This document shows positions 163-59,153 of a DNA stretch of 64,000 nucleotides, in pieces. The stretch is from positions 62,001-126,000 of IMG/VR virus record IMGVR_UViG_3300035698_010479. One strand, 5' to 3'. The number at the start of each line of letters is the position of its first letter. Positions within the stretch are counted from its first letter, which is position 1. Made by a program: the position numbers and the translations under genes. The notes under the pieces are model-generated. The model saw only the letters and a list, made by a program, of their open reading frames with translations. It had not been told where the DNA came from and ran no database searches.

Positions 163-912
163 ATGCACTCACCGTTAAAATACTGTACTAAGGGTGTACC
201 ACTACCAAATTATTTAATTGACGGACCAGAGCGTGTTTTAAACGTTTCTGAAGCTAATGTGGAAGTAGTTTACGGAGGTGATGGTTCAGTACTTCGTGGA
301 GTACAAGGTATAGTAAAGAACAATGTACCAGACGTTCTAATACTTGGTATTAATACTGGACACGTTGGCTTCTTATCAAACGATATTAGTAAAGAACAAG
401 CATTAGCTTTCCTTACCAATCCTAATGAGGCCCTTATTGAGAAGCGTAATATGTTACGTATAAGCAATAATGATACTGTATGGTATGCACTTAATGAAAT
501 AGTAATTCAACCACTAAAAAGAGGACCATTATTTGAAACGCTGCTTAAAGTTGACAATGATGATTTAGTATATAAGGGAGATGGCTTGATAATTTCTACT
601 CCTTCTGGTAGTACTGCTTATAATCTATCTGCTGGAGGACCTATTATACATCCAAGTACCAACGTGCTTGGTATTACACCTATATGCCCATTTTCTCTCG
701 CTGCACGGCCTATTGTAGTACCGAATTCTGTAAAACTTCTTGTTAATACTTCTGCCGATGCTGAAATAACTATAGATGGTGTATCAGTGTTCGTTGGAGT
801 ACTAAAGAATATGTCGATAGATCTTGCAGCATTTACTATAAATTTAGTTAAGTTTGACTCGTTTTTTGAGGCAATACATAATAAACTTGGGTGGAACTAC
901 TCTATACGGTGA
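163..912 (+). CDS. nadK: NAD kinase
   Basis: GGDG, GINTGHVGFL, NE and GDGLIISTPSGSTAYNLSAGGP motifs of the NAD kinase family. Confidence 0.93.
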   Translation: MHSPLKYCTKGVPLPNYLIDGPERVLNVSEANVEVVYGGDGSVLRGVQGIVKNNVPDVLILGINTGHVGFLSNDISKEQALAFLTNPNEALIEKRNMLRISNNDTVWYALNEIVIQPLKRGPLFETLLKVDNDDLVYKGDGLIISTPSGSTAYNLSAGGPIIHPSTNVLGITPICPFSLAARPIVVPNSVKLLVNTSADAEITIDGVSVFVGVLKNMSIDLAAFTINLVKFDSFFEAIHNKLGWNYSIR

Positions 913-1959: not shown

Positions 1960-2748
1960 ATGCTAAAAGAAATAAAAAAGAAGTCTTTTGCTAATGGTTG
2001 TGTATATTTAATGCACACAAAGGACGGCTACCCTATAGAAGTTACTGATACATTCCTACCTTTTTATACTAAAAATGCTATAGGTGTACATCAAAATTAT
2101 CTAAAAAATGATGATTTAGGAAGTAGAAAAGAGCGTTGGATGGTAGGTGTGTCTACAATGAGTGGTTGTCCAGTCGGTTGTAAGTTCTGTGCCACTGGTA
2201 CTATGAAAAAATGCAGGAACCTTACAGCGGAAGAAATTGTCGAGCAAGTTCAGTTTATTTGGGATAAGAACTTAGGCACATGGGTAGATGGCGCTCAAGA
2301 ATTTAAGATCAATTATACCCGCATGGGTGAACCTTTTTTAAACCTGGTCGAAGTAAAAAAGGCTATCAGTGTACTTTCCGAATACAACCCTAAAATACAT
2401 CATTATGTGTCAACTATTGGTGTTAAAGGGTCAGATTTTTCATGGATTAAGGGCAACATAACACTACAATTTTCTATTCATTCGTTTAAAGAAGAATACA
2501 GAGATTGGCTTATACCTTATAAACATAAAATGTCTTTGGAAGAGATTGGAAAAGTTAGGACTGGTAGTAATCTTAAAACTACACTCAATCTTACTTTGGC
2601 CCGCCCAGAAGATTTCGATATTGGCGTTCTTAAAAAGTATTTTGATCCTGATTATTTTTTTATAAAAATTTCCCCTATTAATACTAATGAAGTATCAGAA
2701 AGTAATGGTATGGGTAGTGGTATTATAAGTCAACATAATTTAATATAA
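1960..2748 (+). CDS. RlmN/Cfr-like radical SAM protein, core part lacking the C-terminal Cys segment
   Basis: STMSGCPVGCKFCAT (CxxxCxxC), RNLTAEEIVEQV, MGEP, STIG, SIH and KISPIN align with the RlmN core; ends before the xACGQL motif. Confidence 0.88.
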   Translation: MLKEIKKKSFANGCVYLMHTKDGYPIEVTDTFLPFYTKNAIGVHQNYLKNDDLGSRKERWMVGVSTMSGCPVGCKFCATGTMKKCRNLTAEEIVEQVQFIWDKNLGTWVDGAQEFKINYTRMGEPFLNLVEVKKAISVLSEYNPKIHHYVSTIGVKGSDFSWIKGNITLQFSIHSFKEEYRDWLIPYKHKMSLEEIGKVRTGSNLKTTLNLTLARPEDFDIGVLKKYFDPDYFFIKISPINTNEVSESNGMGSGIISQHNLI

Positions 2749-2762: not shown

Positions 2763-3050
2763 ATGGCTATAAATATCGCAGCTGAGGTAGCTTTGCTTAA
2801 GAAGTTAAAACAAAGATTTGTTAATACTGACGCGTATCTAGAGTCAATTCAGGATATGTACGAGGAAGGTCTAATAACAGCTAAAGCATTCAGAGAAATA
2901 ATAAACGAATTAGCTAAACCAAAAATAACAAAGGGTAAATCAAATAGATTGGTACCTCAAAAAGTACTTAAATCTATAATCACAAAACAAACTGGTGTAC
3001 AGGAAATAGATCCATGTTCTCATGGTAACTTCACAAGAACATCATGTTAA
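2763..3050 (+). CDS. small protein ending in a Cx9C tail (possible radical SAM substrate or partner)
   Basis: 95 aa, SD AGGAG, C-terminus DPCSHGNFTRTSC; overlaps the next radical SAM gene. Confidence 0.7.
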   Translation: MAINIAAEVALLKKLKQRFVNTDAYLESIQDMYEEGLITAKAFREIINELAKPKITKGKSNRLVPQKVLKSIITKQTGVQEIDPCSHGNFTRTSC

Positions 3051-3928
3051 ACATTTCATTTATAAATAAACTTAATTTTAGGGAAAACAGCTGTGTTTTA
3101 AACAACACTAATGCTGAAAAAATACCACATAAATATGTGAATATCTATGTAAAAATTACAAGTAAGTGTAATGCTGATTGTAGATTTTGTGTGTATTGTA
3201 CTGACTTTAATAACAAAAAAGAAGTATTCAACTTCGTAAAGTTTGAAAAAATTCTTTTATATCTTGAAGCCAATAATATACACATACATAAGATATCTTT
3301 TACCGGAGGTGAACCATCACTATATTGTAAGAGTATTGAAAAATGTATGGTAAGTGTATTAAAATTGAAATATAAACCATTCATTGTTGTAAATTCTAAC
3401 GGTTTCAAGTTGGGCTTGTTACAAAAAATAAAGGGTATAGACAATATATCTTTATCTAGACACACTATAACAGATGAAGACAACTTCAAGTTATACGACA
3501 CACGCTCAGTTGCTTCATCAAATGACATAAGTAACGCTCAGCCAAATAAAATACACTTGACATGTAACCTTATTAAAGGATTTATAGACTCAGAGGAACG
3601 TATCATTGACTATCTTGAAAAAGCAGCATCTCTAAATGTATATGATGTAGGATTTGTAAGCTTGATGAAGGTAAATACATTCTGTAAAACAAATCATGTG
3701 GATTTTAACGATATAATTTTTAAAAGAAAAGATATAGTGTGTAATAAAGAATGGTCTAATTCCGATGTATGCAGATGTAAAAACTTTCTATACTTACCCA
3801 GTAAGGGTAATAAAGTTGTAAAATTTTATTCACGTTATAGATGTAAGAATGATGTTGACTCTAAAAGTAATTATGTATTTGATGGTAGTCATTTTAGAAG
3901 TAATTTTGGTGGTACAATAATCTATTAG
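3044..3928 (+). CDS. radical SAM protein of unknown function
   Basis: KITSKCNADCRFC (CxxxCxxC), SFTGGEP, VNSNG; extra C-terminal Cys (CRC). Confidence 0.88.
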   Translation: MLNISFINKLNFRENSCVLNNTNAEKIPHKYVNIYVKITSKCNADCRFCVYCTDFNNKKEVFNFVKFEKILLYLEANNIHIHKISFTGGEPSLYCKSIEKCMVSVLKLKYKPFIVVNSNGFKLGLLQKIKGIDNISLSRHTITDEDNFKLYDTRSVASSNDISNAQPNKIHLTCNLIKGFIDSEERIIDYLEKAASLNVYDVGFVSLMKVNTFCKTNHVDFNDIIFKRKDIVCNKEWSNSDVCRCKNFLYLPSKGNKVVKFYSRYRCKNDVDSKSNYVFDGSHFRSNFGGTIIY

Positions 3929-5331: not shown

Positions 5332-6474
5332 ATGGAAAGACAGTTAGCATCTATACAAAAAATAGTAGATATACAACCAATAGTTGGTGCTGATAAAATT
5401 GAAGTTGTGTTTATTCTAGGCTGGCAGTGTGTTGCAAAGAAGAACGAGTTTAAAATTGGTGATCTCTGTGTATATTTTGAAATAGACTCCCAGTTACCAA
5501 AGCATATTATATTTGATTTTATGGCACATAGAAAATTCAGAGTCAAAACAATCAAGCTTAGAAAACAAATATCACAAGGATTAGCATTACCACTGTCGAT
5601 TCTATCTAATTTTACAAATAAAAATATAAATTCTTTCCGTGAAGGGGATGATGTATCAGAATTAATAGGTGTTACTAAATATGACCCTAGGCCACAGGAT
5701 GCTGACCCAGTTAGTACTAAAAAGCATAATCCTATTGTTAATTATTTAATGGATTACTTCTGGTTTAGGAAAGTATATAACCTTGTTATGCCTAAAAAAA
5801 CTAAAGGCAACTTTCCAGAATTCATTAAAAAAACTGATGAGACTCGTTTACAAAGTTATCCATTAGTGCTCGTAAAAAATATAGGAAGAAAGTTCTATCT
5901 TACCGAGAAATTGGATGGTAGTTCTGCGTCTTATTTTTTTAATAAAGCACTTGTTGGTAAAAGGTTTGGATTGTTTCCTATCGACAAGGGTAATGGCTTT
6001 GGCGTATGTTCTAGAAATATAAGACTTGTCACACAAGATAAAAGATATTGGTGGAAGTACGCTCTAGATAATAATATGGAAGAAAAAACTAGAACCATTT
6101 CTAAATGTTTAGACTGTAGTATCGCTATACAGGGTGAACTCGTTGGTCCTGGTATTCAGAAAAATAAATATTGTTTAACCGAACTGGACTTTTATTGTTT
6201 TAATTTATTCAATATAGACACAAATACATATTTATCTAAAGAGGATAAAGAAATTATCTGTGATCAGTTTAATATAAAACTTGTTCCTTGTGATGATACT
6301 ATCATCGAATTATCTACTGAGCATGATGTTGCATTTTTTGTTAACCTTTCAAAAAGGAAAAGTAAGCTAAATAAAAAGACCACTGCTGAAGGTATAGTAG
6401 CAAGGAGATTAACAGACGAAACGATAAGCTTTAAAGTAATAAATCCAGAATGGTTACTAAAAAATGATGAATAA
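5332..6474 (+). CDS. RNA ligase, DRB0094-like family
   Basis: N-terminal RQLASIQKIVDIQPIVGADKIEV domain, TEKLDGSS, IQGELVGPGIQKN, EGIV, SFKVIN. Confidence 0.9.
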   Translation: MERQLASIQKIVDIQPIVGADKIEVVFILGWQCVAKKNEFKIGDLCVYFEIDSQLPKHIIFDFMAHRKFRVKTIKLRKQISQGLALPLSILSNFTNKNINSFREGDDVSELIGVTKYDPRPQDADPVSTKKHNPIVNYLMDYFWFRKVYNLVMPKKTKGNFPEFIKKTDETRLQSYPLVLVKNIGRKFYLTEKLDGSSASYFFNKALVGKRFGLFPIDKGNGFGVCSRNIRLVTQDKRYWWKYALDNNMEEKTRTISKCLDCSIAIQGELVGPGIQKNKYCLTELDFYCFNLFNIDTNTYLSKEDKEIICDQFNIKLVPCDDTIIELSTEHDVAFFVNLSKRKSKLNKKTTAEGIVARRLTDETISFKVINPEWLLKNDE

Positions 6475-14243: not shown

Positions 14244-14759
14244 TTAACCCCCATTAGTGAATAATTGTGGATCTTCTGGCATAAAATCAAAAAAAGCTGG
14301 GTCTTGTGCTACCAAATAAGGTGCTGACACAGTCAGGCATCTATGATTCTCGTTAACTAAGTATTTATATTTAGGTTCTTTTCCCCAGATTCTTAATCTC
14401 TCTGTTATTATTTTTCTGCCTAGACCTTGCTGTATCATATTATTGAACTGGCGCTGAAATTTATATCTTATATATCTTATATAACCACTTCGCATGAATT
14501 CCCATATAACCTCATCTTTCTTTTCTATCATGTTGTCTGCAGTTGTAATTACTATGTAGCGATATCCTGTTAACTGTTCATATAATTTCTGCATAGTATA
14601 ACTGTAGTCAAGTGGCTCAATACCTATAATTATTACACCTAATTCAGTAACCTCAAAACAATCCGATAGGTTGGAGCCCAATGGTACCCGTTTATAGGGT
14701 ACCATAAAAGCTGAGAGCATCACAGATATTTCTGTTTGTAACTCCTCTAAACTATACAT
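14244..14759 (-). CDS. hypothetical protein
   Basis: 171-aa ORF coupled to the Clp ATPase gene. Confidence 0.75.
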   Translation of the reverse strand: MYSLEELQTEISVMLSAFMVPYKRVPLGSNLSDCFEVTELGVIIIGIEPLDYSYTMQKLYEQLTGYRYIVITTADNMIEKKDEVIWEFMRSGYIRYIRYKFQRQFNNMIQQGLGRKIITERLRIWGKEPKYKYLVNENHRCLTVSAPYLVAQDPAFFDFMPEDPQLFTNGG

Positions 14760-16695
14760 TAGCTACTTCCTTTAAAGCACCTTTCTGGTCGCTTTCTAGA
14801 TATGTAGGTGCCTTACTTGGTTTTTTGGAGAACTTGAATGTAACACCATTTTTTGCTGTACTTACTGTAACTATGGTATTAATATCTGTAGTACCCTTTA
14901 GTAGTTGTACTGCTAAAGGGGTAGATATATATCGTTCAATAGCTCTCTTTAAAGGTCTAGCACCATACTCTTTAGTAATACCTTTTTCGTATATAAAGTT
15001 ACATACTTTTTTATCAAAAAATATCTCTATATCTTTATATTTAGTTTTATTACTTTGTAAGTTAGTATTTAGTTTAAACAATTCGATATCAATGATTCTG
15101 AAATAGTCTTCTTTTGATAAGTCATTAAAGTAAATTATTTCATCTAATCTATTTAAAAATTCAGGTTTAAATTTCTTTTTTAGTGCTTGTTCCAAAGCTT
15201 GCTCTTTTTTAGCTTCTGTTACTACATTGACATCTCCAAAGCCAATAGTTTTTGATATACTAGCAATATTTTCTACACCTACATTAGATGTCATAATAAT
15301 TACTGTATCCTTAAAAGAAACTTTTGTACCTTTGTTATCTGTTAGTCTACCTTCTTCAAGCACCTGTAAAAGTAGTTGATATATTTTACTTGATGCTTTT
15401 TCTATTTCATCAAAAACTACCACACTAAATGGATTTTCAATTATAGCATTTGTTAAAAGGCCACCATTTTCGTATCCCTGATAACCATTTGGAGATCCTA
15501 TAAGTTTAGAATATTCATGATCTGCTGAATATTCAGAACAATCTATAGTTATCAAGTTATCACGGTCTTTTATCAATTCATTTGCAAGTATTTTTCCTGT
15601 TAAACTCTTCCCACAACCAGTAGATCCGGCAAACAAGAAAGAGCCGATAGGTTTAACTGGATCTTTAAGCCCTACACTAGCACGTTGTATAGCGTCAGTT
15701 AAACTAGCTACAACTTTATCTTGCCCTATAAGGGAGACTTTCATATTTGTAGCTAAATTTAAAAGGTCCTCTTCTGGAACGTCTGCAAAGACTTTCTTTT
15801 TCTTGTCCACTTTATTAGCAAACTGGTCCATAGCAGTAGCACCAGAAGACATAGTTTTCTTACCACTACCGCAATCAGTACAATCAGAAGGTTTTTTATC
15901 TTTGTTAGCTAGCTCCTGAGCATTCTCATAAGTCAGAAAAGGATTACAAGCTTGGCATATATCATATAGTTCTTTCATCAATAGTGGTGGTGATACTCTA
16001 GCTGGTACACCCATATTTTCTAGAACCTGAAACAAAGCTTCAAAGTCTTCGATACATAAAGTAACAACAAAAGTATTAAAGCTAACGCTACTATGAAAAA
16101 ATCTACCATTTATTAATTTACTTAAATCTTGCTCATTAAATACCTTCACAGATACATACCTGCCTATACGTTTCCACCATTTGTCTTTTGTGTTATATAT
16201 AGAATTGGTTGAAGTTTTATCCACAGGATTTCCTTGTTCATCAACAAAGCCATCCGCCAACTCCTTATTATCTGGTATAGTCACATCCGGTATATAGTCC
16301 CAAAGAGGGTTCTCTTCTAACGCTACCACTTCCTCCATATTAGTATCAGTAGTTTTTACTTTCAAAATATGATTTTTATTTATAACAATACTGGAATAAG
16401 CTAAATTTTTATTTTTAGAAAAAATTGCATCCAAGAAATTTGAACGTAATTTAAAAAAATCTAAATTTTTAGATAGTGTTTCGTCGCTTATTTTATGAAG
16501 AATTTGATTAATATTTGCTACACAAGTAGCAATTAAGTAATCATCATATAAGATCTTAGCAACAAGACCATCATCCTTAGCAAAAAAAGTTAGTTTATCT
16601 TCTATATCCTCTGATTTAATTTCTAAAATCAACAGGTTAAAATCTATTAATTCACAATAAACTTCGTGTACTTCGTAGTTAACGTTTTCAGTCAT
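14752..16695 (-). CDS. ClpA/B-type AAA+ ATPase with a single (D2) AAA module and an unfamiliar N-terminal region
   Basis: LIGQD, PIGSFLFAGSTGCGKS, DCSEY, LIGSPNGYQGY, FDEIEK, FKPEFLNRLD, YGARPLKR; no D1 Walker A seen. Confidence 0.88.
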   Translation of the reverse strand: MTENVNYEVHEVYCELIDFNLLILEIKSEDIEDKLTFFAKDDGLVAKILYDDYLIATCVANINQILHKISDETLSKNLDFFKLRSNFLDAIFSKNKNLAYSSIVINKNHILKVKTTDTNMEEVVALEENPLWDYIPDVTIPDNKELADGFVDEQGNPVDKTSTNSIYNTKDKWWKRIGRYVSVKVFNEQDLSKLINGRFFHSSVSFNTFVVTLCIEDFEALFQVLENMGVPARVSPPLLMKELYDICQACNPFLTYENAQELANKDKKPSDCTDCGSGKKTMSSGATAMDQFANKVDKKKKVFADVPEEDLLNLATNMKVSLIGQDKVVASLTDAIQRASVGLKDPVKPIGSFLFAGSTGCGKSLTGKILANELIKDRDNLITIDCSEYSADHEYSKLIGSPNGYQGYENGGLLTNAIIENPFSVVVFDEIEKASSKIYQLLLQVLEEGRLTDNKGTKVSFKDTVIIMTSNVGVENIASISKTIGFGDVNVVTEAKKEQALEQALKKKFKPEFLNRLDEIIYFNDLSKEDYFRIIDIELFKLNTNLQSNKTKYKDIEIFFDKKVCNFIYEKGITKEYGARPLKRAIERYISTPLAVQLLKGTTDINTIVTVSTAKNGVTFKFSKKPSKAPTYLESDQKGALKEVANV

Positions 16696-16709
16696 TAATA
16701 ATTCCTCAT

Positions 16710-17591
16710 TTATTTAGAATTTAAGAATGTTACCATATCAAGCGCATCAGAATACAGCATTGTATCTAAAGATGATGGCACATTACTAGCTCTTGTAGCA
16801 TAGAATTCTTCAGCAACCTCTTCAAAAGTAACGCCTTTGGCAGATAACCTTGTATTAATAGCTACTTTTTGTACCATAGTTAATGCATGTTCTTCACCTT
16901 TTTCTGAGATAGGTGTAGCCATATTAGAAGAAGTAGTTGTACCTGGAATATTACTCATCTTTGGTAAAACACTCGGCCCTTTAGTAGTATTAGTATTACT
17001 CATAGAGGGTAGTGCCTTCGCAACCTCCTCTATAACTTCTTTTGTGGCTGCCGTACTTTGTTTAGGTGGCATTGAAGAAGGTATGGAAGACGGTGGTGCT
17101 GATGAAAAAGTAGGTGGTACATCAGCGGAAGTACTATGTTCTACTGGAAAAGGTGTACCTGTTGTAAAATTAGGTGTGCTAAGTTTAGGCATTGCTGGTG
17201 TGAAAGACTGTCCTGCACTACCTTCAGATTCTTCGTCCTCTTCTTCTAAAAATAAGCCTACACCCCAGTTACGTGCTGCACTCTTAATAGCTCTAGACGT
17301 AGCTGATTTATACACATTCCCTAAATCAACGTTTCTAAATTTTTTAGCTGAGCCAAAACCATCTTGCTTGGCAAGGGTGTTACCCAAGTTATCATAAACT
17401 CTAAGTGAAACAAGTACTAATACCTCTTCATCAATAACTTTATGATCTAGAATTTCTAAACCCCAATTACAATTAAATGCTTTGTTTAATCGGTCAAGCA
17501 CGTATTTAGTCTTAACATATTTAAAGCCTTGTCCTGGTTTTTGGTCAACTTTTAAATCTTCGTATAATTTATCAATAATTTGCTGTTCCAT
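16710..17591 (-). CDS. Rad52/Rad22-like ssDNA annealing protein (Sak-type)
   Basis: FKYVKTKYVLDRLNKAFNCNW, QDGFG, KSATSRAIKSAARNWGVG; Pro/Ser-rich linker. Confidence 0.8.
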   Translation of the reverse strand: MEQQIIDKLYEDLKVDQKPGQGFKYVKTKYVLDRLNKAFNCNWGLEILDHKVIDEEVLVLVSLRVYDNLGNTLAKQDGFGSAKKFRNVDLGNVYKSATSRAIKSAARNWGVGLFLEEEDEESEGSAGQSFTPAMPKLSTPNFTTGTPFPVEHSTSADVPPTFSSAPPSSIPSSMPPKQSTAATKEVIEEVAKALPSMSNTNTTKGPSVLPKMSNIPGTTTSSNMATPISEKGEEHALTMVQKVAINTRLSAKGVTFEEVAEEFYATRASNVPSSLDTMLYSDALDMVTFLNSK

Positions 17592-18128: not shown

Positions 18129-18692
18129 TTATTTATCTTCCCTCAACCAATAAGTCAAACCATTTGCTAAACTAAAAAAATCTGGAAAGAAGTTAACCCC
18201 ATCTACGTGCTCATTATAGTCATATCTTATAGAGAAAACAGTTACTTCTTTCTCCAAGGCCCTTTTCTGACTAGCGGGAGAGTCATCAATAAAAACACTA
18301 GCGTCATCCAATAAAAAATGTTTATCAAATCCTATATATAGATTGTTATAGGGTATATTTCTAATATCTAACCAGCGCTCAGTAGGCCCAAATGTTTCTG
18401 GGTCTCTATGTGAAGCGATAGTGACATGGTAACCACTCCTCATTAATGTCTTAGTCAATGCACCTGCATTTTGAAAACTACTGAATTCATGTTGACGCAT
18501 ATGTACTTCTTTTACAGTAGCTGCCATTTGATCTTCACTCATAAAGCCCTCATAAAAATGCCACTTAGCTTTATACTTATCTGTACTATTCCCAGGTAAT
18601 GGGCAATTAGGGTAATCCCTTTTTATAACTTCGCCCCAAATGTTGGCCATATTCCATAATATACCATCAATATCTACTACTGCTTTTTTCAT
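18129..18692 (-). CDS. 5'(3')-deoxyribonucleotidase-like HAD phosphatase
   Basis: VDIDGIL, IASHR, FIDDSP, YDYNE. Confidence 0.8.
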   Translation of the reverse strand: MKKAVVDIDGILWNMANIWGEVIKRDYPNCPLPGNSTDKYKAKWHFYEGFMSEDQMAATVKEVHMRQHEFSSFQNAGALTKTLMRSGYHVTIASHRDPETFGPTERWLDIRNIPYNNLYIGFDKHFLLDDASVFIDDSPASQKRALEKEVTVFSIRYDYNEHVDGVNFFPDFFSLANGLTYWLREDK

Positions 18693-21363: not shown

Positions 21364-21666
21364 TTACTTATTATGCCACTTATTCCACATAAATAACCAT
21401 TTATCACATTTATTTTGAGCTATGGCTCTTATATCGTCTTCGGTAGCTTCTGGATAATTTACCCTAATCATGTCTAAAGCACAAATTATAACGTCCACAG
21501 CTTCTCCTATAATACCATCCTTTCCTGGTAACTTACCACAATGTCCTGTCTGTATATTTACTTCTTCTGCTAATTCTCCTACCTCTGACATTAATGAAGC
21601 CATTATATTATGTGACGTTCTTCCTGGTGTAACTGTGTCCGAAACTTTAAAAACTGTTTTAAGCAT
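21364..21666 (-). CDS. MazG-like NTP pyrophosphohydrolase
   Basis: LMSEVGELAEE...GEAVDVII ExxE/ExxD pattern. Confidence 0.78.
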   Translation of the reverse strand: MLKTVFKVSDTVTPGRTSHNIMASLMSEVGELAEEVNIQTGHCGKLPGKDGIIGEAVDVIICALDMIRVNYPEATEDDIRAIAQNKCDKWLFMWNKWHNK

Positions 21667-21863
21667 AATCTTCCGCCGTATTTAAAATCATAACTAGTAA
21701 TATCTTCTTCTGTGAGATACCTTTTAATACGTTCCCCACAAACTATACAATGCAAATCAAAACCGGAGGTATCATTTAAAGGTACCTCCCTATATAGCCC
21801 ACCACAATTATTTAGACAAACTGCATCTGTCATATCTTTTATATTATTAAACGGCTTAATCAT
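21603..21863 (-). CDS. hypothetical protein with Cys pairs
   Basis: CLNNCGG...CIVCG. Confidence 0.55.
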   Translation of the reverse strand: MIKPFNNIKDMTDAVCLNNCGGLYREVPLNDTSGFDLHCIVCGERIKRYLTEEDITSYDFKYGGRLCLKQFLKFRTQLHQEERHII

Positions 21864-21923
21864 TTAACACTTTCCCCCGCCTTTTCCTTTACCACCCTTC
21901 TTATCTTTATCTGTTTTAGCCAA
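21864..21923 (-). CDS. 19-aa Lys/Gly-rich micropeptide
   Basis: AAGGAG, 6-nt spacer, TTG; MAKTDKDKKGGKGKGGGKC; stop directly abuts the next ATG. Confidence 0.55.
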   Translation of the reverse strand: MAKTDKDKKGGKGKGGGKC

Positions 21924-21941: not shown

Positions 21942-22559
21942 TTAATATTTTATAAGTACTACCGCCAGTACACCAGAGGAATCATATATATGATCCTTAT
22001 TTAAAACTGTTTGTAAAGTATAACCATATTTTTCAAATAAGTCAAGCCACCATTGCTTAGAATGTATTTGAATATGTGTTTTATCATTTTTACTTACGTC
22101 CAGTACAAAGTCTTCACCTTCTACGGCTGCTACCGGTATACGTACTATAAGCTGTGTTGCGTTTACTATATCACCAATAATAGTGTGTAGTGAAAAGGTA
22201 GGTATATGTTCGAGTACATCTAAAAATAGTAGTATATCAAATGGCCCAGAAACTAAATCTGGGTTATAATGATGTAATATACCTCCTAGATTATACTGGT
22301 CAATACCAAATTCTACAGCCCAATAACTTATATCAGTACCTTCACATAGTACATTACGGTTATTTAGTTCATATATTAAACCACCTGTAGCTGCCCCATA
22401 GTCCAGTACGCTTTTGTTCTTTAAGTAAGGAAGTAAATCATCTGCCAATCCTGAAAATTTCTTCTCTCTATAATCTTCATAATTACTTATGGTACTTCTC
22501 ACATAATAATTTTTGTCAAATAGCATACTATGACCTTTAAATAAATTTGGAGTGGCCAC
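21942..22559 (-). CDS. class I SAM-dependent methyltransferase
   Basis: VLDYGAATG, GTDIS, DVLEHI. Confidence 0.88.
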   Translation of the reverse strand: MATPNLFKGHSMLFDKNYYVRSTISNYEDYREKKFSGLADDLLPYLKNKSVLDYGAATGGLIYELNNRNVLCEGTDISYWAVEFGIDQYNLGGILHHYNPDLVSGPFDILLFLDVLEHIPTFSLHTIIGDIVNATQLIVRIPVAAVEGEDFVLDVSKNDKTHIQIHSKQWWLDLFEKYGYTLQTVLNKDHIYDSSGVLAVVLIKY

Positions 22560-23475
22560 ATGGCATAATTACTTGCTCAATAAGGTCATTGTGTTCATTG
22601 AAGAAACATTTACCTTCTTTACAGTTACAAGTATCAAAAGCGGTATCTTTTTTATATGTGTTCTCCCAAGTTTTAATTATATCATCAATATGACATAATG
22701 TAAAGTCAGAATTAAATTTTCTGTCAATTAGAGGGTTAGCACTACAATGATAGACATAGCCATCGGCATTAACAAATGGTTTTATTCTGCCCATCCAACA
22801 TTTATTTGGTACTGTATATTTCTTTTGTTGAAAAAAGAATTTTGGGTACTTATCTAAATAAGGTTGGATCATGTCTGTTGATTTATTTATGTCTTCAATA
22901 GATAGGCAATTAGGTACTATACGAACATAAGTAGCTTTATATTTATCTGCATATGCTGAAATTTTATCTAGCTGTTTTTCTGTTGATAAATCAGTAATTA
23001 CGTAAGAAAAACCTAAAACAACATTTGAAGGTATATTAATATCTATATCTTCAACGTAGTCTAAACTATTAAGACTTATTCTTAACCAAGTTAGTCTACT
23101 AAGATTTTTATAACTAACGTTATCTAGTTTTACACCATTAGTAATCATACCGATACCAGAGTAATTATAAGCAGCAAATTCTATAATATCATTAATGTGC
23201 TTATACATTGTTGGATCGCCTCCTCCGGTAAACTCAACAGTCTTTGCACCAAGAGTTTTAAAATCTGTAAGTACCTTGATAGACTGTTCTAAAGAAAGTT
23301 CATCAGCTTTATTTCGATTTGCTACAGAACACATTACGCAATTTAAATTACATTTATTAGTGGGGGCTAATTGAATACTGATAGGTCTAAAATAACCTTG
23401 CTGCATCTCCTTTAATCTATCCAGATTATGAAGTAATTTATTTTGTGTGCTTGTGTACAGCTGTTCTTTATTCAT
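22537..23475 (-). CDS. radical SAM protein with SPASM/twitch-like C-terminus
   Basis: CNLNCVMC, FTGGGDP, ITNG, CW...NADGYVYHC...CNCKEGKC. Confidence 0.9.
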   Translation of the reverse strand: MNKEQLYTSTQNKLLHNLDRLKEMQQGYFRPISIQLAPTNKCNLNCVMCSVANRNKADELSLEQSIKVLTDFKTLGAKTVEFTGGGDPTMYKHINDIIEFAAYNYSGIGMITNGVKLDNVSYKNLSRLTWLRISLNSLDYVEDIDINIPSNVVLGFSYVITDLSTEKQLDKISAYADKYKATYVRIVPNCLSIEDINKSTDMIQPYLDKYPKFFFQQKKYTVPNKCWMGRIKPFVNADGYVYHCSANPLIDRKFNSDFTLCHIDDIIKTWENTYKKDTAFDTCNCKEGKCFFNEHNDLIEQVIMPCGHSKFI

Positions 23476-24190
23476 ATATGTAATCCTCTATTAGTAAGTT
23501 TTTATTCCATTGTAAATTAGCGAAAGCCTTATCATGCCACTCATAACTGCAACAGGTACCCATGTCTCTTCCTCGATGGTTAGTTCTAGATAATGTAGGG
23601 AAAATTTCATAAAGATTTTCTTTCTTGCAATGAGCTGCAACAGCCCAATCCCACCCGTAAGAATTAAAGTACTCCTTAGCCAAATCATCATAGAACCAAT
23701 TAGGCTTAAATACCCTCTCGAAATTTTCACTAAATGTACACCAGCCTAATCCCGTAAAACTACCACATCTGGACACAAGTTTATTAGGTGTTACTAAGGT
23801 ACTATCATAATTAAATAAACCATAGCTATTGAATTTAAGTGGATCATTTTTAAAAGTCTTTCTGTAAAATTCGGCAAGTAATAGTGCATCTGGGCCAACA
23901 TGTAAATCATCATCCATATGACAATTAAAAGTACTACCTGAATTAAAAGCCAGTTCTACCGCTGAAAACTGATTTAATCTATGGTTTTTTCTTGTTTTAT
24001 TTACTTCAACTGTTATAGAAGCAAAACCGTAGTTACTGTTTTTTAAAACATTTTTTATTTCGTTTGTTTTTTCAGAAGGGTCTATACATATAAAAAAATG
24101 CCAATCACTAGTGTCACATTTAGCAATATCAATCAAGGTCTCTTGTAAATAATCTGGTCTGTTATAAGCAGTCATACTTAGTGTTTTCAT
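23468..24190 (-). CDS. GT-A fold glycosyltransferase (family 2-like)
   Basis: TAYNRPDYL, HMDDD (DxD), GLGW, GWDW. Confidence 0.78.
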   Translation of the reverse strand: MKTLSMTAYNRPDYLQETLIDIAKCDTSDWHFFICIDPSEKTNEIKNVLKNSNYGFASITVEVNKTRKNHRLNQFSAVELAFNSGSTFNCHMDDDLHVGPDALLLAEFYRKTFKNDPLKFNSYGLFNYDSTLVTPNKLVSRCGSFTGLGWCTFSENFERVFKPNWFYDDLAKEYFNSYGWDWAVAAHCKKENLYEIFPTLSRTNHRGRDMGTCCSYEWHDKAFANLQWNKNLLIEDYIYE

Positions 24191-24199: not shown

Positions 24200-24583
24200 T
24201 TAATATCTAGTGCCATTTAAATCTTTTAATTCAATAGTCATTGTATGAAAAATATATTTAGAAATGTTATGAGACACTTCATCTATTACTATCTTAGCAA
24301 TATCTTCCCTAGAGTTATTATGGTATTCTAATGGTATATCCCCATGTATACATTTATATAAGATGCTCTTACCAATATGAGTTATACTAAAAGATGTAGC
24401 TACAAATATTTCTATAGCTGTACTTTTTATTGTAAAAGCATCAAGTATTGCGTTTTGAGCTTTAGTTAATAACTCACTGTAGATACGTATACTGTCATCT
24501 GTTGGGGCCTTATGTTCATTAATAGTTTTAGCATAAGGTACATGAACTTCACGAGTAGCGCCTAGTTGATAAGTATCAAACAT
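24200..24583 (-). CDS. hypothetical protein
   Basis: Start ATG 24583 after AAGGAG (the listed upstream extension overlaps the tRNA). Confidence 0.65.
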   Translation of the reverse strand: MFDTYQLGATREVHVPYAKTINEHKAPTDDSIRIYSELLTKAQNAILDAFTIKSTAIEIFVATSFSITHIGKSILYKCIHGDIPLEYHNNSREDIAKIVIDEVSHNISKYIFHTMTIELKDLNGTRY

Positions 24584-24607
24584 ATAATTCTCCTTAATTC
24601 TTATGAA

Positions 24608-24693
24608 TGGGTAGTGATGGAATCGAACCATATGCCCTGTGGGAATAGATTTACAGTCTATCGTAGGACCATCCTACCTTATATACACCACCC
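24608..24693 (-). tRNA. tRNA-Tyr(GTA), atypical (extra ~7 nt between acceptor and D stems)
   Basis: GGGTGGT acceptor / ACTACCC, GTAG-GATGGTC-CTAC D arm, ATAGA CTGTAAA TCTAT, variable arm, GGTTCGATTCC. Confidence 0.75.
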
Positions 24694-24698: not shown

Positions 24699-25142
24699 TT
24701 ATTCACACCAGTTTTTTTCTTTTGTCCCACCATTATACTTAACGGCTAGGCCTTTGTCAAGTAAAATAGTAGCTAAGTCACCTTCGGCTGTTAAAACTTC
24801 TGCGACAATTCTAAAATATTTTCCTCGTCTAGTATTAAGAAGTGATACCTTGGTATGATCTCGCAGTATAACATATACAGCCTCTTTAGCCGCTAATGCA
24901 AGTTGATGCTCCTTTTCACATTTACTACGCATCTCAGGTGTATCAATACCAAATACACGTACTGATATTTTATAGCCAAATAACTCTGGTATGTCATTTA
25001 TATTTACAGTTAAAGTATCTCCATCATAATTACTAATAACTTCTACATCATAAAAATTTTCATATGTTTTTTCTGACGCATTACTATTATCATAACTACA
25101 AAAAGTACATAACAATAAAAATGATACTAATAGGCTTTTCAT
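24699..25142 (-). CDS. thermonuclease (SNase-like) with signal peptide
   Basis: YDGDT, VRVFGIDTPE, GKYFRIVA, GLAVKYNGG. Confidence 0.88.
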   Translation of the reverse strand: MKSLLVSFLLLCTFCSYDNSNASEKTYENFYDVEVISNYDGDTLTVNINDIPELFGYKISVRVFGIDTPEMRSKCEKEHQLALAAKEAVYVILRDHTKVSLLNTRRGKYFRIVAEVLTAEGDLATILLDKGLAVKYNGGTKEKNWCE

Positions 25143-26130: not shown

Positions 26131-26742
26131 TTATCTAATAGGTCTTTTCCTTTTCTTATCACTACTTCCGACCTTAATATGACAATCTAAACAACCCTCG
26201 TGTATCATTTTATCTTCTTTAGCGAACAACACTTGTCCTTTTGAGTGGGGGTAGTGACAGATATTACAAGTTACCTTATCATCTTTATACCATACCAGAA
26301 GATTATTAGAGCCAACCAATAGCTCTTTGGTCATAGGATCTACTGCATTTCCACCAGTTACTGGATCAATTACCTTTCTCCCTATAAACCTACCTGGGGG
26401 GTTGTATTGTGTACAAATAACGTTATCATGTTTAACTATAGCGGTTGTATTAAAAGGGTCATGGCAAGTCATACAAGACGAGTAGCCACTCTTTCTGGCC
26501 CTATCCGGGTGTCCTGCTGCGTGAAGGTTACCTACACCTTGTATATAAGTAACAATAGGCACTACTTCTGGGCAATCTTTACATATAATCGGATCTGGAC
26601 ATACCATTTCAATACACTTACTAGGTTGGGTTAACACTAAAGGCCCACCCTCCTCAGCGCTGAACCACACCTTATCCGCAGCAGCTGCGGCCGTAATGGT
26701 AAAACATAAACACATTATAAGTATTACTAATATCTTCTTCAT
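26131..26742 (-). CDS. secreted three-heme cytochrome c
   Basis: Sec signal peptide (MKKILVILIM...AAAAA); CMTCH, CNICH(YPH), CLDCH heme-binding motifs plus spare His residues. Confidence 0.85.
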   Translation of the reverse strand: MKKILVILIMCLCFTITAAAAADKVWFSAEEGGPLVLTQPSKCIEMVCPDPIICKDCPEVVPIVTYIQGVGNLHAAGHPDRARKSGYSSCMTCHDPFNTTAIVKHDNVICTQYNPPGRFIGRKVIDPVTGGNAVDPMTKELLVGSNNLLVWYKDDKVTCNICHYPHSKGQVLFAKEDKMIHEGCLDCHIKVGSSDKKRKRPIR

Positions 26743-42862: not shown

Positions 42863-43096
42863 TTAATCTCCTATATAAGAAAATTCACAACAAGGAAATT
42901 TTCTTCCTTGTTCATCTAAAGGTTCTTTCCAATTATCTAAATCTAGATTATCAGGATTACCGTCGGTTGGCTCCATATTACAACTACATCCTCTTGGTAC
43001 ACATATATCGCAATAGAAATCATTTATCTGCTCACCAGAGTAACTTGGTAAATATAACCATACAGCTACTTTACCACAATCACATTTACCTGTCAT
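42863..43096 (-). CDS. Cys-rich small protein
   Basis: CDCG, CDIC, GCSC, PCC. Confidence 0.7.
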   Translation of the reverse strand: MTGKCDCGKVAVWLYLPSYSGEQINDFYCDICVPRGCSCNMEPTDGNPDNLDLDNWKEPLDEQGRKFPCCEFSYIGD

Positions 43097-44046
43097 TATT
43101 TATTTAATACCCTAGATAAAATAAATTGACCACAAGCTGACATAATTTCCTCTCCTGGTGAAAATTGTACTTTTATGTTTTTGTGCTTATCATATAAAAG
43201 TTCCACCAACTTAGCAAAATTCTTAGCTTCTTCAAAACTTGTACCTTCGCATTTATTAAATCTAAGTAAACGTAACTCAATATTATTAAATACTGTTAGT
43301 AAACTTAATAAGTAATTTATATCATTTATGGAGTCGTTAACACCATCAAAAAACATATGATGTAGTATAACATCAATACCATCTTGTTCTAAATACTTAA
43401 GGTAGTCTATGGCAGTAAATGTATCAACAGAACTAGGAATCAATGTGTTCCTTATAGAATCTTCTGCACTGTGCAGGGAGTAAAATACCCTAAATGGTTG
43501 TCTTTTACTCCCCTTTGTATACTTTCTAGCTGGGTTTAAATGTGTTGTCCATACACACTCAGAAAGTAACTTAATATAATCTATATCAGTATTTGGAATT
43601 TTAGGTAATGTCGTAGCAATGTCTACCCCATCTATACCAGCAGACATATCAAAACTCTGTATACACTGTATAATATCTTCCGTAACTTCATACACAAGTT
43701 CAAGGTCTAAAAAGCCATCTCCCATACCCATCCAAGATAATTTAGTGTACATGCTTCGTAATTCAGGCCTAATCTTTAACTCAGCATCAAGTGCATCTAG
43801 CACGTTTCTAGTAATAGCCATAGCAGACAGTTTATGGTAATGGCATTTTTTAACTGTTAGATAACAGAACTTGCAACCTATAGGACAACCTACGGATGTA
43901 CTTATAAAAATATTATATTTATTACCTACACTTCCGTAACCTCCACAGCCAACTTCTCCTGGTGGTATGGTCTTTATAGCCGTTTCAGAACCATCATCGT
44001 GTACATATTTTGATACGTGTCCATTTTTAGCTCTATACACCTCCAT
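43096..44046 (-). CDS. RlmN/Cfr-like radical SAM protein (full length)
   Basis: ISTSVGCPIGCKFC, WMGMGD, YSLHS, GVND, FNK, GEEIMSACGQF. Confidence 0.88.
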   Translation of the reverse strand: MEVYRAKNGHVSKYVHDDGSETAIKTIPPGEVGCGGYGSVGNKYNIFISTSVGCPIGCKFCYLTVKKCHYHKLSAMAITRNVLDALDAELKIRPELRSMYTKLSWMGMGDGFLDLELVYEVTEDIIQCIQSFDMSAGIDGVDIATTLPKIPNTDIDYIKLLSECVWTTHLNPARKYTKGSKRQPFRVFYSLHSAEDSIRNTLIPSSVDTFTAIDYLKYLEQDGIDVILHHMFFDGVNDSINDINYLLSLLTVFNNIELRLLRFNKCEGTSFEEAKNFAKLVELLYDKHKNIKVQFSPGEEIMSACGQFILSRVLNK

Positions 44047-56269: not shown

Positions 56270-57385
56270 TTAAAGTAACTCTAAAAATAACTTACCAATA
56301 ACTTCCGATGAAAAATTATCCATCAGATTACTACGTAGTAAATCTCCTCTTGACTGGGCATCTTCGTAATTATTATACACATACCTAGCTAATAGCGCAC
56401 CGTGCGTAGGAGAAGCTTCAGCCCAATTCATGCTACCAAGATACCAAGGCGAGAAAGGCATACCAGACACAGGTGTCTCTACATAATCAACAAGGTAGCT
56501 ATTATCCTCTGTCAAATATTGACTAACACCTCCAAAACCAGTAGCTATTACAGGATTACCAGAGGCGCCAGCATTAGCTGTACTCATGCCCCAACCCTCT
56601 CCTCTGTCCAGGGTAATATAACAGTCGCACCTTTTATGTAATGCTGTAATTTCTTCCTCGCTTAACATGTCCAATATCAAGTAAATTGGGGGGTACTTTG
56701 GTAAAACAATCATCTGTTTTAGTCTTTTTATTGTCGATCTAATAGCATCCCTTTCAGGGTTACTGTAGTTACTACCGTATGTTTTTAAAACTAAGGCTAC
56801 ATTTTCGTCCTCTTGAAAAGCTGTCCAGAAAGCTTTTATAGTGGACAATGGGTTTTTTCGTTCTGTCCATTGATTTATATTATAAAATAAAAACTTATTA
56901 GGGTCTTCGATACTTAATACTGTACTACAATCTTCATTTTTATCAGGATTGAATAAATCAACTACGTGTGGCACAACATAAATAGGTATAGTAACACCAC
57001 TAGACTCAAATACATCTTTATTCCATTTACATGGTACAAATACTTTGTCTACTGTTGTATTTATGTACTCTGGCCAAGATGGGTGTAAACTATCAGTCTC
57101 CCAAACTGTGTAACCAACGTTAAACTTACTCTCCTCACGATAAGACTTCCAGAATTCAGGTGTGGTATGTATAACAACCGTATTATATTGAATATCTTTA
57201 TTAATTAGTGATAATATAATTTCAGAATCTTCACCTAAATCAGGCTTAGCTTCTTCAAATGATATAGGGCTTACTGTGAGTGGTATACCTTGTTTATGTA
57301 ATGCTATTATATAACCACGTGCAGCTTTTGCATACCCAGAATTATCCAAGCATGGTGCTATATATTTAATACCTGTGATTTTCAT
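56270..57385 (-). CDS. GT-B glycosyltransferase (family 4-like)
   Basis: SGYAKAA, YTVWET, ERKN, EGWGMSTANAGASG, ATGFGG. Confidence 0.88.
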   Translation of the reverse strand: MKITGIKYIAPCLDNSGYAKAARGYIIALHKQGIPLTVSPISFEEAKPDLGEDSEIILSLINKDIQYNTVVIHTTPEFWKSYREESKFNVGYTVWETDSLHPSWPEYINTTVDKVFVPCKWNKDVFESSGVTIPIYVVPHVVDLFNPDKNEDCSTVLSIEDPNKFLFYNINQWTERKNPLSTIKAFWTAFQEDENVALVLKTYGSNYSNPERDAIRSTIKRLKQMIVLPKYPPIYLILDMLSEEEITALHKRCDCYITLDRGEGWGMSTANAGASGNPVIATGFGGVSQYLTEDNSYLVDYVETPVSGMPFSPWYLGSMNWAEASPTHGALLARYVYNNYEDAQSRGDLLRSNLMDNFSSEVIGKLFLELL

Positions 57386-57390
57386 AATAA

Positions 57391-57777
57391 TTAAATCCCC
57401 CTCTTATAAAATTTACGTAATACGTAATCTGTAGGTGACACAACACAGCTATAATTAAGTGTATTGATATTAAAAACCCCAACCTGTTCATCTGTTCTAG
57501 ATACTGCTCTATGAATACCGCTTGTTTTTATAGTAAAAAAATCTACACTAAAGTGGTTATTATCAGAGTAGTTGTCAAACAGTTGCCAATTATACAGTAC
57601 TAAACCACACTCCTCTTCACATTCGCGTACCATAGCCTCATAAGAAGTTTCATTTTCTTCTATTTTTCCACCCACACCGTTAAGCTTACCTAACTGCCAA
57701 ATAGGTCTCTGTTTCCTAATAAGTAATGTGTTTTCATGAGTGTCATCAAAAATAATACCTACTACATATTTAATCAT
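57391..57777 (-). CDS. NUDIX hydrolase
   Basis: GGKIEENETSYEAMVRECEEECG Nudix box. Confidence 0.92.
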   Translation of the reverse strand: MIKYVVGIIFDDTHENTLLIRKQRPIWQLGKLNGVGGKIEENETSYEAMVRECEEECGLVLYNWQLFDNYSDNNHFSVDFFTIKTSGIHRAVSRTDEQVGVFNINTLNYSCVVSPTDYVLRKFYKRGI

Positions 57778-57780
57778 GCG

Positions 57781-58257: not shown

Positions 58258-58265
58258 AAATTACC

Positions 58266-59132: not shown

Positions 59133-59153
59133 AAGTACCCCTTAATATGGTTA

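What the first reader, a model, noticed from the sequence alone, without database searches (positions are those of the whole stretch)
21942..24190. Glycosyltransferase-radical SAM-methyltransferase cassette
Seen: three overlapping or abutting genes: a GT-A (DxD), a radical SAM with a SPASM-like tail, and a class I methyltransferase. Inference: a sugar install-and-tailor pathway acting on DNA bases, virion proteins or host surface receptors. The radical SAM step makes it unlike T4-type glucosylation.
Basis: inference. Interest (0 to 1): 0.62.

Follow-up and report, generated by a model that had tools for sequence, protein, structure and literature searches.

The report
Phage sugar-transfer, radical-SAM, methylation operon
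A salt-lake jumbo phage carries a tight three-gene operon (sugar transferase, radical-SAM enzyme, methyltransferase) whose last two genes form a pair found almost only in viruses and almost always beside sugar-transfer genes, so it most likely builds an unusual methylated sugar coat, on a target that is still unknown.

Summary
Window 21942-24190 (minus strand) carries three packed genes:
- a GT-A glycosyltransferase (240 aa, invariant DDD, closest to the GT13 enzymes POMGnT1 and GnT-I);
- a radical SAM enzyme (312 aa, CX3CX2C plus a C-terminal Cys domain that looks like a one-cluster Twitch, not a full SPASM);
- a class I methyltransferase (Methyltransf_23).

The conserved unit is the rSAM-methyltransferase pair, not the trio.
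- In 87 loci from diverse phages the methyltransferase lies directly downstream of the rSAM in 41.
- Both families are about 90-100% viral.
- The glycosyltransferase partner changes between lineages. Among 54 dereplicated groups, some glycosyltransferase lies within three genes in 42.
- In at least three phage lineages the cluster sits in the head-tail module, between the major capsid gene and the tape measure gene or beside a portal-like gene.

My best reading is a pathway that makes, transfers and tailors a radical-modified, methylated sugar. Virion proteins are the most likely acceptor.

DNA is a live rival. DNA methylases and nucleases flank the cassette in this phage's clade, and one relative joins it to a divergent thymidylate-synthase-like gene. 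This genome, however, has only a canonical ThyA plus DHFR.

The chemistry and the acceptor are inferred, not shown. I rate it a new variant of a known kind, of moderate interest.

The parts
23468..24190 (-). GT-A fold glycosyltransferase (P0001, 240 aa), GT13-like, with an invariant DDD at residues 93-95
   Evidence: ORF. AAGGAG ribosome-binding site 6 nt upstream. Pfam GT2 weak. Family alignment A2. Profile hit to POMGnT1 5ggf at E 3e-6 over positions 4-229. Foldseek TM 0.72 to POMGnT1 and 0.70 to GnT-I.
22537..23475 (-). Radical SAM enzyme (P0002, 312 aa): CX3CX2C cluster site, GGGDP SAM motif, C-terminal Twitch-like Cys domain
   Evidence: PF04055 at E 1e-12. Invariant Cys pattern in A1. 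AF2 pLDDT 92. VIA Z 20.7 to DesII, 20.5 to SkfB, 17.4 to BlsE and 15 to BtrN. 242 homologues, about 90% or more viral.
21942..22559 (-). Class I SAM-dependent methyltransferase (P0003). The listed start is GTG at 22559; the probable true start is ATG at 22526 (194 aa).
   Evidence: Methyltransf_23 at E 1e-8. phrog_27380 at E 2e-12. Alignment A3 with invariant G55, D76, D114, E117, H118, D159 and H162. Directly downstream of the rSAM in 41 loci.
21864..21923 (-). Possible 19-codon micro-ORF (TTG start, AAGGAG 5 nt upstream) for a Gly/Lys-rich peptide that ends in Cys. Its link to the operon is uncertain.
   Evidence: A like peptide follows the MT in L007/L091 and precedes the GT in L008/L009. 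It is absent from L090 and L177-L180.
24200..24631 (-). 143-aa ORF of unknown function abutting the GT, probably the first gene of the same transcription unit
   Evidence: ORF. No Pfam or PADLOC hit. Its stop lies 9 nt before the GT start.
24732..24760 (-). Promoter-like site, a perfect TTGACA-17-TATAAT, upstream of the 143-aa ORF. This is a consensus match only.
   Evidence: The total number of promoter-like sites in the region is no higher than in shuffles.
56270..57385 (-). GT4/GT1-type glycosyltransferase 32 kb away. Its orthologue sits directly upstream of the GT-A/rSAM/MT cassette in relative L178, so it may belong to the same pathway.
   Evidence: PF00534 match. 37% identity over 321 aa (E 2e-64) to L178:2874-4004. 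L178 gene order.

Best explanation
This is a late-acting or accessory glycosylation operon of a jumbo phage.

Proposed mechanism:
- The conserved core is the rSAM-methyltransferase pair. The rSAM uses a 5'-deoxyadenosyl radical, with help from one auxiliary Fe-S cluster, to abstract a hydrogen from a sugar carbon. The sugar would be a host nucleotide sugar or an already transferred residue. The outcome could be oxidation, epimerisation, deoxygenation or decarboxylation, as in DesII, BtrN, SpeY and BlsE.
- The class I methyltransferase then methylates the product.
- The GT13-like GT-A enzyme, perhaps together with the distant GT4 at 56270-57385, transfers or extends the sugar on the acceptor.
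- The acceptor is set by the lineage-specific glycosyltransferases. In this phage it is most probably a virion protein.

Shown: the gene identities, folds and motifs, the operon packing, the rSAM-MT linkage, the glycosyltransferase neighbourhood, and the mostly viral distribution (Atlas taxa plus a 185,579-species genome scan).

Inferred: the sugar as substrate, the order of steps, the type of radical chemistry, and the acceptor.
For: - Tight translationally coupled operon.
- The rSAM-MT pair recurs in unrelated genome backgrounds: the T4-like cyanophage SynMITS9220M01, pelagiphage HTVC008M, the jumbo-phage clade, and siphovirus-like contigs.
- The MT is directly downstream of the rSAM in 41 loci and present in 52 of 87 loci.
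- Among 54 dereplicated groups with at least 3 genes on each side, a GT lies within 3 genes in 42 and the MT in 33.
- Neighbours are glycan enzymes: GT2, GT1/GT9, NAD epimerase/dehydratase, DegT aminotransferase, CmcI-like O-MT, sulfotransferase, PIG-L, ATP-grasp, B12-rSAM and UDP-glucose dehydrogenase.
- Structural-module embedding in other lineages: major head protein (phrog_29) ... GT, GT2, rSAM, MT ... tape measure. A second lineage has an HK97-type capsid gene 3-4 genes upstream. A third has a portal-like gene directly upstream.
- The rSAM fold is closest to DesII, a nucleotide-sugar enzyme, over its full length (Z 20.7, 304 residues aligned). BlsE, SpeY and BtrN are also matched.
- The four to five invariant C-terminal Cys fit a Twitch domain.
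- The GT resembles enzymes that extend protein-linked glycans and is acidic (pI 5.6-6.3 across the family).
- Both the rSAM and MT families are about 90-100% viral. Only 5 full-length rSAM hits occur in 185,579 species genomes, all on MAG contigs.
- An intein sits inside the rSAM of one relative, which suggests the gene matters to the phage.
Against: - No enzyme activity, glycan or expression data exist. No RNA run holds the locus.
- In this phage and its close kin the cassette is not in a structural module. It lies among small genes, nucleases and DNA methylases.
- By fold the rSAM ties with the peptide maturase SkfB (Z 20.5) and is close to SuiB. A protein or peptide substrate is therefore not excluded.
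- Capsid proteins of lineages with the cluster show no Ser/Thr-rich C-terminal tails.
- The held genome has no nucleotide-sugar synthesis genes, so the donor must come from the host.
- If the pair merely tailored a common sugar, cellular homologues would be expected. They are almost absent.
Confidence: 0.45

Rival explanations
1. DNA hypermodification. The GTs put a sugar on a modified base of phage DNA, the rSAM and MT tailor it, and the product protects the genome from host nucleases.
For: - In the clade that shares this GT, DNA enzymes flank the cassette. An N6/N4 DNA methylase lies 1-2 genes upstream (L007, L179). A Dam-like methylase (L178) or a pyrimidine-dimer excision nuclease (L180) lies directly downstream. 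An SNase-like nuclease is 1-2 genes upstream in the window and four relatives.
- In L178 the cassette is contiguous with the orthologue of the window's GT4 and with a very divergent thymidylate-synthase-like gene (46 bits to true TS). That gene could be a pyrimidine hydroxymethylase.
- In the window, two GT4 genes flank ThyA-DHFR.
- A virus-restricted distribution fits a virus-specific substrate.
Against: - The held 228 kb (86% complete) has a single TS homologue. It is canonical (297 bits to TIGR03284, 259 bits to solved TS, PFN motif kept) and lies next to DHFR, so there is no hydroxymethyl handle.
- The GT has a GT-A, GT13-like fold, and the GT and MT are acidic.
- In other lineages the pair sits between capsid and tail genes.
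Confidence: 0.2
2. Remodelling of a host envelope glycan (LPS, capsule or protein O-glycan precursor) during infection, for example to block superinfection or stop progeny sticking to debris.
For: - In SynMITS9220M01 and HTVC008M the pair lies in accessory islands with a heptose epimerase, GT, carbamoyltransferase and UDP-glucose dehydrogenase.
- Many clusters hold a large GT9/GT1 (heptosyltransferase-like) protein.
- L012, a Gammaproteobacteria MAG contig, places GT2-rSAM-MT beside two epimerases and a Wzy_C/TPR O-antigen-ligase-type protein.
Against: - No membrane-embedded transferase, flippase or Gtr-type gene lies near the cassette in the window.
- The families are nearly absent from cellular genomes.
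- Other lineages place the cluster in structural modules.
Confidence: 0.15
3. A peptide-derived product. The Gly/Lys-rich, Cys-bearing micro-ORF would be the substrate of a Twitch/SPASM-type maturase, then glycosylated and methylated. From memory, this resembles a glycosylated RiPP or mycofactocin (MftA peptide, MftC rSAM, MftF GT2, MftM methyltransferase).
For: - The micro-ORF has a strong ribosome-binding site directly after the MT.
- A like peptide follows the MT in L007/L091 and precedes the GT in L008/L009, despite diverged DNA.
- The composition filter gave only two other hits, which are short and unlike these, in about 1.1 Mb.
- The rSAM fold ties with SkfB and SuiB.
- The acidic GT and MT could complement a basic peptide.
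Against: - The peptide is absent from five of eight relatives and from all other lineages that have the rSAM-MT pair.
- The rSAM has no RiPP-recognition domain.
- Neighbourhoods elsewhere are dominated by nucleotide-sugar and GT genes.
Confidence: 0.07
4. A viperin-like nucleotide-modifying enzyme that makes a modified nucleotide or signalling molecule, with the GT and MT acting on that small molecule.
For: pVip and viperin models hit the rSAM core (E 1e-14 in PADLOC, 1.4e-11 in NCBIfam). Viperin structures match at Z about 17.
Against: The hits cover only the generic N-terminal core (positions 5-115 of 262) and fall far below cut-offs (44 bits against 180). I recall viperins as lacking an auxiliary-cluster Cys domain, whereas this protein has one. 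DesII and SkfB score higher.
Confidence: 0.05

Closest known systems
Mycobacteriophage virion glycosylation (Freeman et al. 2023, Cell Host Microbe; known here only through citations in PMC12801897 and PMC12619734 and from memory)
   Same: Phage-encoded glycosyltransferases decorate capsid and tail-tube proteins. In several lineages the rSAM-MT-GT clusters lie inside the head-tail module.
   Different: I know of no radical SAM enzyme in that system. The proteins here are unrelated, the window's own cassette is not in a structural module, and no glycan has been shown.
T4-type DNA glucosylation and the diverse 5hmC glycans (Pyle et al. 2024, Cell Rep; cited in PMC12619734)
   Same: Phage glycosyltransferases that use host nucleotide sugars. 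DNA methylases and nucleases flank the cassette in this clade, and one relative has a divergent TS-like gene next to it.
   Different: This genome has no hydroxymethylase, only canonical ThyA plus DHFR. The GT has a GT-A, GT13-like fold, whereas I recall the T4 enzymes as GT-B. The rSAM step has no counterpart.
Sugar-modifying radical SAM enzymes DesII, BtrN, SpeY and BlsE
   Same: They are the best or high structural matches: DesII at Z 20.7 over 304 of 312 residues, BlsE at 17.4, BtrN at 15, and SpeY in Foldseek. The size is similar. The CX12GX4C hairpin plus two more Cys resembles the Twitch domain as I recall it from BtrN.
   Different: Identity is 12-19% with no sequence-level membership (BlsE model 30 bits against a 400-bit cut-off). 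The peptide maturases SkfB and SuiB score equally well. The substrate is unknown.
GT13 N-acetylglucosaminyltransferases (POMGnT1, GnT-I)
   Same: Best profile hit (E 3e-6, nearly full length) and best fold hit (TM 0.70-0.73). Both have an acidic DxD-type motif in a GT-A fold.
   Different: About 17% identity. No Pfam GNT-I hit at E 0.1. A 240-aa minimal soluble protein without a stem or lectin domain. A family of only 20 clusters, all from kin of this phage.
Mycofactocin pathway (MftA, MftC, MftF, MftM; from memory)
   Same: The combination of a small peptide, an rSAM with a C-terminal Fe-S domain, a GT2-type glycosyltransferase and a methyltransferase. The MftC model hits the rSAM core at E 1.7e-12.
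   Different: 47 bits against a 265-bit cut-off. There is no MftB, MftD or MftE. The micro-ORF is unlike MftA and is missing from most relatives.

Membership tests
Radical SAM superfamily (PF04055) | CX3CX2C motif for the SAM-binding [4Fe-4S] cluster, and a Pfam score above the gathering cut-off | tested here: met
   C42, C46 and C49 are invariant in 24 sequences. 49 bits against a 29.5-bit cut-off. Partial TIM-barrel model at pLDDT 92.
SPASM domain (PF13186 / TIGR04085) | Seven-Cys motif CX9-15GX4C ... CX2CX5CX3C ... C that binds two auxiliary clusters (motif recalled from memory) | tested here: not met
   Only CX12GX4C (C226, C244) plus C285 and C290 are invariant; C190 is also invariant. 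C283, C261 and C306 vary. P0002 has no SPASM Pfam hit, and a few homologues have precomputed PF13186. This fits a one-cluster Twitch-like domain.
Twitch-domain sugar/cyclitol rSAM enzymes (BtrN, SpeY) | Shortened SPASM with one auxiliary [4Fe-4S] cluster on four Cys, and activity on a sugar-like substrate | tested here: inconclusive
   The Cys count and hairpin fit. Fold match to BtrN at Z 15 and to SpeY at Foldseek E 1e-8. Cluster content and substrate cannot be tested with these tools.
Viperin / pVip | Full-length match to viperin models, including the C-terminal nucleotide-binding part | tested here: not met
   Only the N-terminal core aligns (positions 5-115 of 262). 44 bits against a 180-bit cut-off.
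GT-A fold glycosyltransferase (GT2 clan) | Single Rossmann-like GT-A fold with a DxD metal-binding motif | tested here: met
   Invariant D93-D95. Foldseek probability 1.0 to many GT-A enzymes. P0001's own Pfam GT2 score is below cut-off (14.6 against 23.3 bits), while 16 of 20 homologues have PF00535.
CAZy GT13 (GnT-I / POMGnT1) | Sequence membership in the GNT-I family and transfer of GlcNAc to mannose | tested here: inconclusive
   Profile hit to 5ggf at E 3e-6 over positions 4-229, and to GnT-I at E 0.05. TM 0.70-0.73 at 17% identity. No Pfam GNT-I hit. Donor and acceptor are not testable.
Class I SAM-dependent methyltransferase (Methyltransf_23) | Rossmann-fold SAM site (Gly-rich motif I, acidic motif II) and a Pfam score above cut-off | tested here: met
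   35.3 bits against a 27-bit cut-off. Invariant G55 and D76. PDB profile hits to class I MTs.
T4-type DNA glucosylation system | dCMP (or dUMP) hydroxymethylase plus GT-B DNA glucosyltransferases | tested here: not met
   The only TS homologue in the 228-kb record is a canonical ThyA beside DHFR. The cassette GT has a GT-A fold. The record is 86% complete, so absence is not proven.
Phage virion-glycosylation clusters | Phage GT genes linked to structural genes, and a glycan found on capsid or tail proteins | tested here: inconclusive
   The linkage is met in other lineages but not in the window or its close kin. Glycan presence cannot be tested with these tools.

The most novel reading that the evidence does not exclude
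The cassette does not decorate a macromolecule. It matures the adjacent Gly/Lys-rich, Cys-bearing micro-ORF peptide (window 21864-21923) into a radical-modified, glycosylated and methylated peptide or peptide-derived small molecule. That would be a phage-made counterpart of glycosylated RiPPs or mycofactocin.

A less extreme version is more likely, at roughly 0.4-0.5. In it, the virus-restricted rSAM-MT pair makes a sugar modification not yet known from cells, and phages display it on virions or DNA.
Probability: 0.07. Interest if true: 0.85.

Novelty: new variant of a known kind. Interest (0 to 1): 0.55.

Why it matters
- Phage glycosylation of DNA and virions shapes restriction evasion, adsorption and immune recognition. 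The systems I know of use only glycosyltransferases and ordinary tailoring enzymes.
- Here a radical SAM enzyme and its partner methyltransferase, both almost confined to viruses, travel with glycosyltransferases across cyanophages, pelagiphages, jumbo phages and siphovirus-like phages. They often sit inside the capsid-tail module. This points to unexplored radical sugar chemistry on phage particles or genomes.
- The pair occurs in two cultured marine phages, SynMITS9220M01 and HTVC008M, so the question can be tested directly.
- Seven full-text searches of the held paper library found no description of such a pair.

Tried and rejected
- Near-identity DNA search of phage records: no match.
- The about-240-aa ORFs upstream of the rSAM in SynMITS9220M01 and HTVC008M are not similar to this GT. 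hhalign of the GT family against nine other neighbour clusters, including the small GT2s, showed only generic N-terminal GT-A similarity at best. The trio as such is therefore not anciently conserved.
- rSAM-MT fusion proteins were sought as a Rosetta stone. The 501-aa and 399-aa homologues are not fusions with the MT.
- Capsid C-termini of cluster-bearing lineages are not Ser/Thr-rich, which is uninformative.
- The sequence profile of the rSAM against the PDB hit only the generic core of MoaA, SkfB, SuiB and viperin. NCBIfam gave 49 sub-threshold core hits.
- PADLOC gave only core-level pVip hits.
- Searches of the genome for epimerase, nucleotidyltransferase and DegT families were empty. The 233-aa neighbour of the L178 TS-like gene has no counterpart in this genome.
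- The sequencing-run search gave salt-lake DNA metagenomes only, with no RNA.
- Literature searches found no described phage rSAM in glycan clusters. The Freeman 2023 paper is not held.
- Not used: the large representative-protein search (the word search left nothing open), complex prediction (no binding is claimed) and any alternative genetic code.
Full report
**Setting.** The window is bases 62001-126000 of a 228-kb IMG/VR virus record that is linear and about 86% complete. It has about 33% G+C. It encodes a family A DNA polymerase, ribonucleotide reductase, a Lon-like protease, Rad52, a baseplate-like protein and many small ORFs. Near-identical DNA occurs only in salt-lake metagenomes, and no RNA run holds it.

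**Observation.**
- Three minus-strand ORFs sit at exactly the reported coordinates.
- The glycosyltransferase (GT) has an AAGGAG ribosome-binding site. Its stop overlaps the radical SAM (rSAM) start (ATGAATAA).
- The methyltransferase (MT) most likely starts at the ATG at 22526, 10 nt after the rSAM stop. Homologues begin there.
- A perfect sigma-70 consensus lies upstream of the preceding 143-aa ORF. This is a consensus match only.

**The three proteins.**

*Glycosyltransferase (P0001).*
- Pfam GT2 is sub-threshold for this sequence, but the family alignment keeps an invariant DDD.
- Its profile hits human POMGnT1 (GT13) at E 3e-6 over nearly its whole length, and also SpsA and GnT-I.
- The AF2 model has pLDDT 90.8; the other four models scored 73-77. 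It matches POMGnT1 and GnT-I at TM 0.70-0.73.
- It is therefore a minimal GT-A enzyme, closest to transferases that extend protein-linked glycans.
- Only 20 clusters of relatives exist in 5.8 billion proteins, all at 49-72% identity.

*Radical SAM enzyme (P0002).*
- It passes the Pfam cut-off.
- In 24 relatives down to 40% identity, C42/C46/C49, the GGGDP motif, C190, C226, C244, C285 and C290 are invariant.
- C226-X12-G-X4-C244 is the hairpin shared by SPASM and Twitch domains. The second half of the seven-Cys SPASM motif is not kept.
- I therefore read it as a Twitch-like domain with one auxiliary cluster.
- The model (pLDDT 92) is closest to DesII (Z 20.7, 304 residues aligned). It ties with SkfB (20.5). 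SuiB, BlsE, PqqE, viperins, MoaA and BtrN follow.
- No curated family claims it.

*Methyltransferase (P0003).*
- It is a Methyltransf_23 class I enzyme.
- Invariant residues are G55, D76, D114, E117, H118, D159 and H162.
- Its PDB relatives are only generic.

**What is conserved.**
- tblastn found the rSAM in Synechococcus phage SynMITS9220M01 and Pelagibacter phage HTVC008M. In each it is followed by a homologous MT.
- I fetched 79 IMG/VR loci, 5 full-length genome-collection loci and several metagenome contigs, and clustered all neighbouring ORFs.
- The MT cluster is present in 52 of 87 loci and sits directly downstream of the rSAM in 41.
- The P0001-type GT occurs only in close kin.
- Other lineages carry different small GT2 enzymes, a roughly 690-aa GT1/GT9 protein, NAD epimerase/dehydratases, a DegT aminotransferase, a CmcI-like O-methyltransferase, a sulfotransferase, B12-rSAMs, PIG-L and ATP-grasp.
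- Among 54 dereplicated groups with at least three genes on each side, a GT lies within three genes in 42 and the MT in 33. An annotated head or tail gene lies within ten genes in 17, which is a lower bound.
- hhalign shows that the GT partners are not specifically related to each other.
- Both the rSAM and MT families are about 90-100% viral in the Atlas. A scan of 185,579 species genomes gave only five full-length rSAM hits, all on MAG contigs, and at least one of those is phage-like.

**Where the clusters sit.**
- One siphovirus-like lineage has the order major head protein, four genes, GT, GT2, rSAM, MT, seven genes, tape measure.
- A second lineage has an HK97-type capsid gene 3-4 genes upstream.
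- A third has a portal-like gene directly upstream, with three GT2 genes downstream.
- In the two cultured marine myoviruses the pair lies in accessory islands with heptose and UDP-glucuronate genes.
- In the window's own clade the flanks are an SNase-like nuclease, DUF1353, a spermidine-synthase-like MT and a metallopeptidase.
- In relatives of that clade the flanks also include DNA methylases, an excision nuclease and HNH genes.

**DNA rival.**
- The genome has a single thymidylate-synthase homologue. It is canonical (297 bits to TIGR03284, 259 bits to solved TS) and lies next to DHFR.
- Two GT4-type genes flank this pair.
- In relative L178 the orthologue of one of these GT4 genes (37% identity, E 2e-64) abuts the GT-A/rSAM/MT cassette. 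It lies two genes from a very divergent TS-like protein (46 bits), which has no counterpart in this genome apart from the canonical ThyA.
- This keeps DNA modification alive for the clade. This phage, however, shows no hydroxymethyl handle. The GT and MT are acidic, although adaptation to salt could explain that.

**Micro-ORF.**
- Directly after the MT is a 19-codon ORF with a strong ribosome-binding site. It encodes a Gly/Lys-rich peptide that starts MAK and ends in Cys.
- A like peptide follows the MT in L007/L091 and precedes the GT in L008/L009.
- The composition filter found only two other hits, short and unlike these, in about 1.1 Mb.
- It is missing from L090 and L177-L180.
- I keep it as unexplained. 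It is the basis of the most novel reading.

**Verdict.**
- The general interpretation, a sugar install-and-tailor pathway unlike T4 glucosylation, is supported by comparative context.
- The unit of conservation is the rSAM-MT pair, with interchangeable glycosyltransferases.
- The model that best fits all contexts has three parts. The pair produces or tailors an unusual methylated sugar. Lineage-specific GTs choose the acceptor. The acceptor is most often a virion protein.
- The radical chemistry and the acceptor in this phage remain inferred.
- Seven full-text searches of the held paper library found no description of such a pair.

Noticed in passing
window 21864-21923 (-); L007:10262-10327; L008:7840-7902: A tiny ORF for a Gly/Lys-rich peptide with one Cys (19-21 aa, starting MAK) lies beside the cassette in three of eight relatives. 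It is downstream of the MT in two and upstream of the GT in one.
   Followed up: partly
window 56270-60472 (-): A canonical thymidylate synthase (58266-59132) and DHFR (57781-58257) are flanked by two GT4/GT1-type glycosyltransferases (56270-57385 and 59204-60472), with an exonuclease next door. The orthologue of the first GT4 is contiguous with the cassette in L178.
   Followed up: partly
L178:1463-2176: A relative carries a very divergent 237-aa thymidylate-synthase-like protein (46 bits to true TS; Cys and Asn motifs kept). It lies two genes upstream of the cassette and could be a pyrimidine hydroxymethylase.
   Followed up: partly
window 1960-2748 (+) and 43096-44046 (-): Two RlmN/Cfr-like radical SAM ORFs. 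The first matches RlmN model positions 101-244. The second matches positions 219-343, plus a weak N-terminal stretch. These may be phage-encoded RNA methylases or split remnants.
   Followed up: no
window 3044-3928 (+): A fourth radical SAM gene (294 aa) with sub-threshold MoaA, viperin and pVip core hits. Its function is unknown.
   Followed up: no
window 26131-26742 (-): A 203-aa protein with a doubled-CXXCH (multihaem cytochrome) motif above the Pfam cut-off (23.1 against 20.6 bits). This is unusual for a phage.
   Followed up: no
L180:3412-5487; protein P0020: The rSAM orthologue of one relative is interrupted by an intein with a LAGLIDADG endonuclease (691 aa). Another homologue (415 aa) has the same Pfam hit.
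   Followed up: no
window 163-912 (+), 5332-6474 (+), 14752-17591 (-), 18129-18692 (-): Accessory genes: NAD kinase, an ATP-dependent RNA ligase, a Lon-like protease with Rad52 beside it, and a deoxypyrimidine 5'-nucleotidase.
   Followed up: no
window 21603-21863 (-); L090:9555-9800 approx.: An 86-aa Cys-rich (zinc-ribbon-like) ORF follows the micro-ORF. Its homologue comes directly after the MT in L090.
   Followed up: no
L179:8145-8717: A relative has a Y1 transposase (IS200-like) and a Cas12f/TnpB-like gene about 2 kb downstream of the cassette's MT.
   Followed up: no
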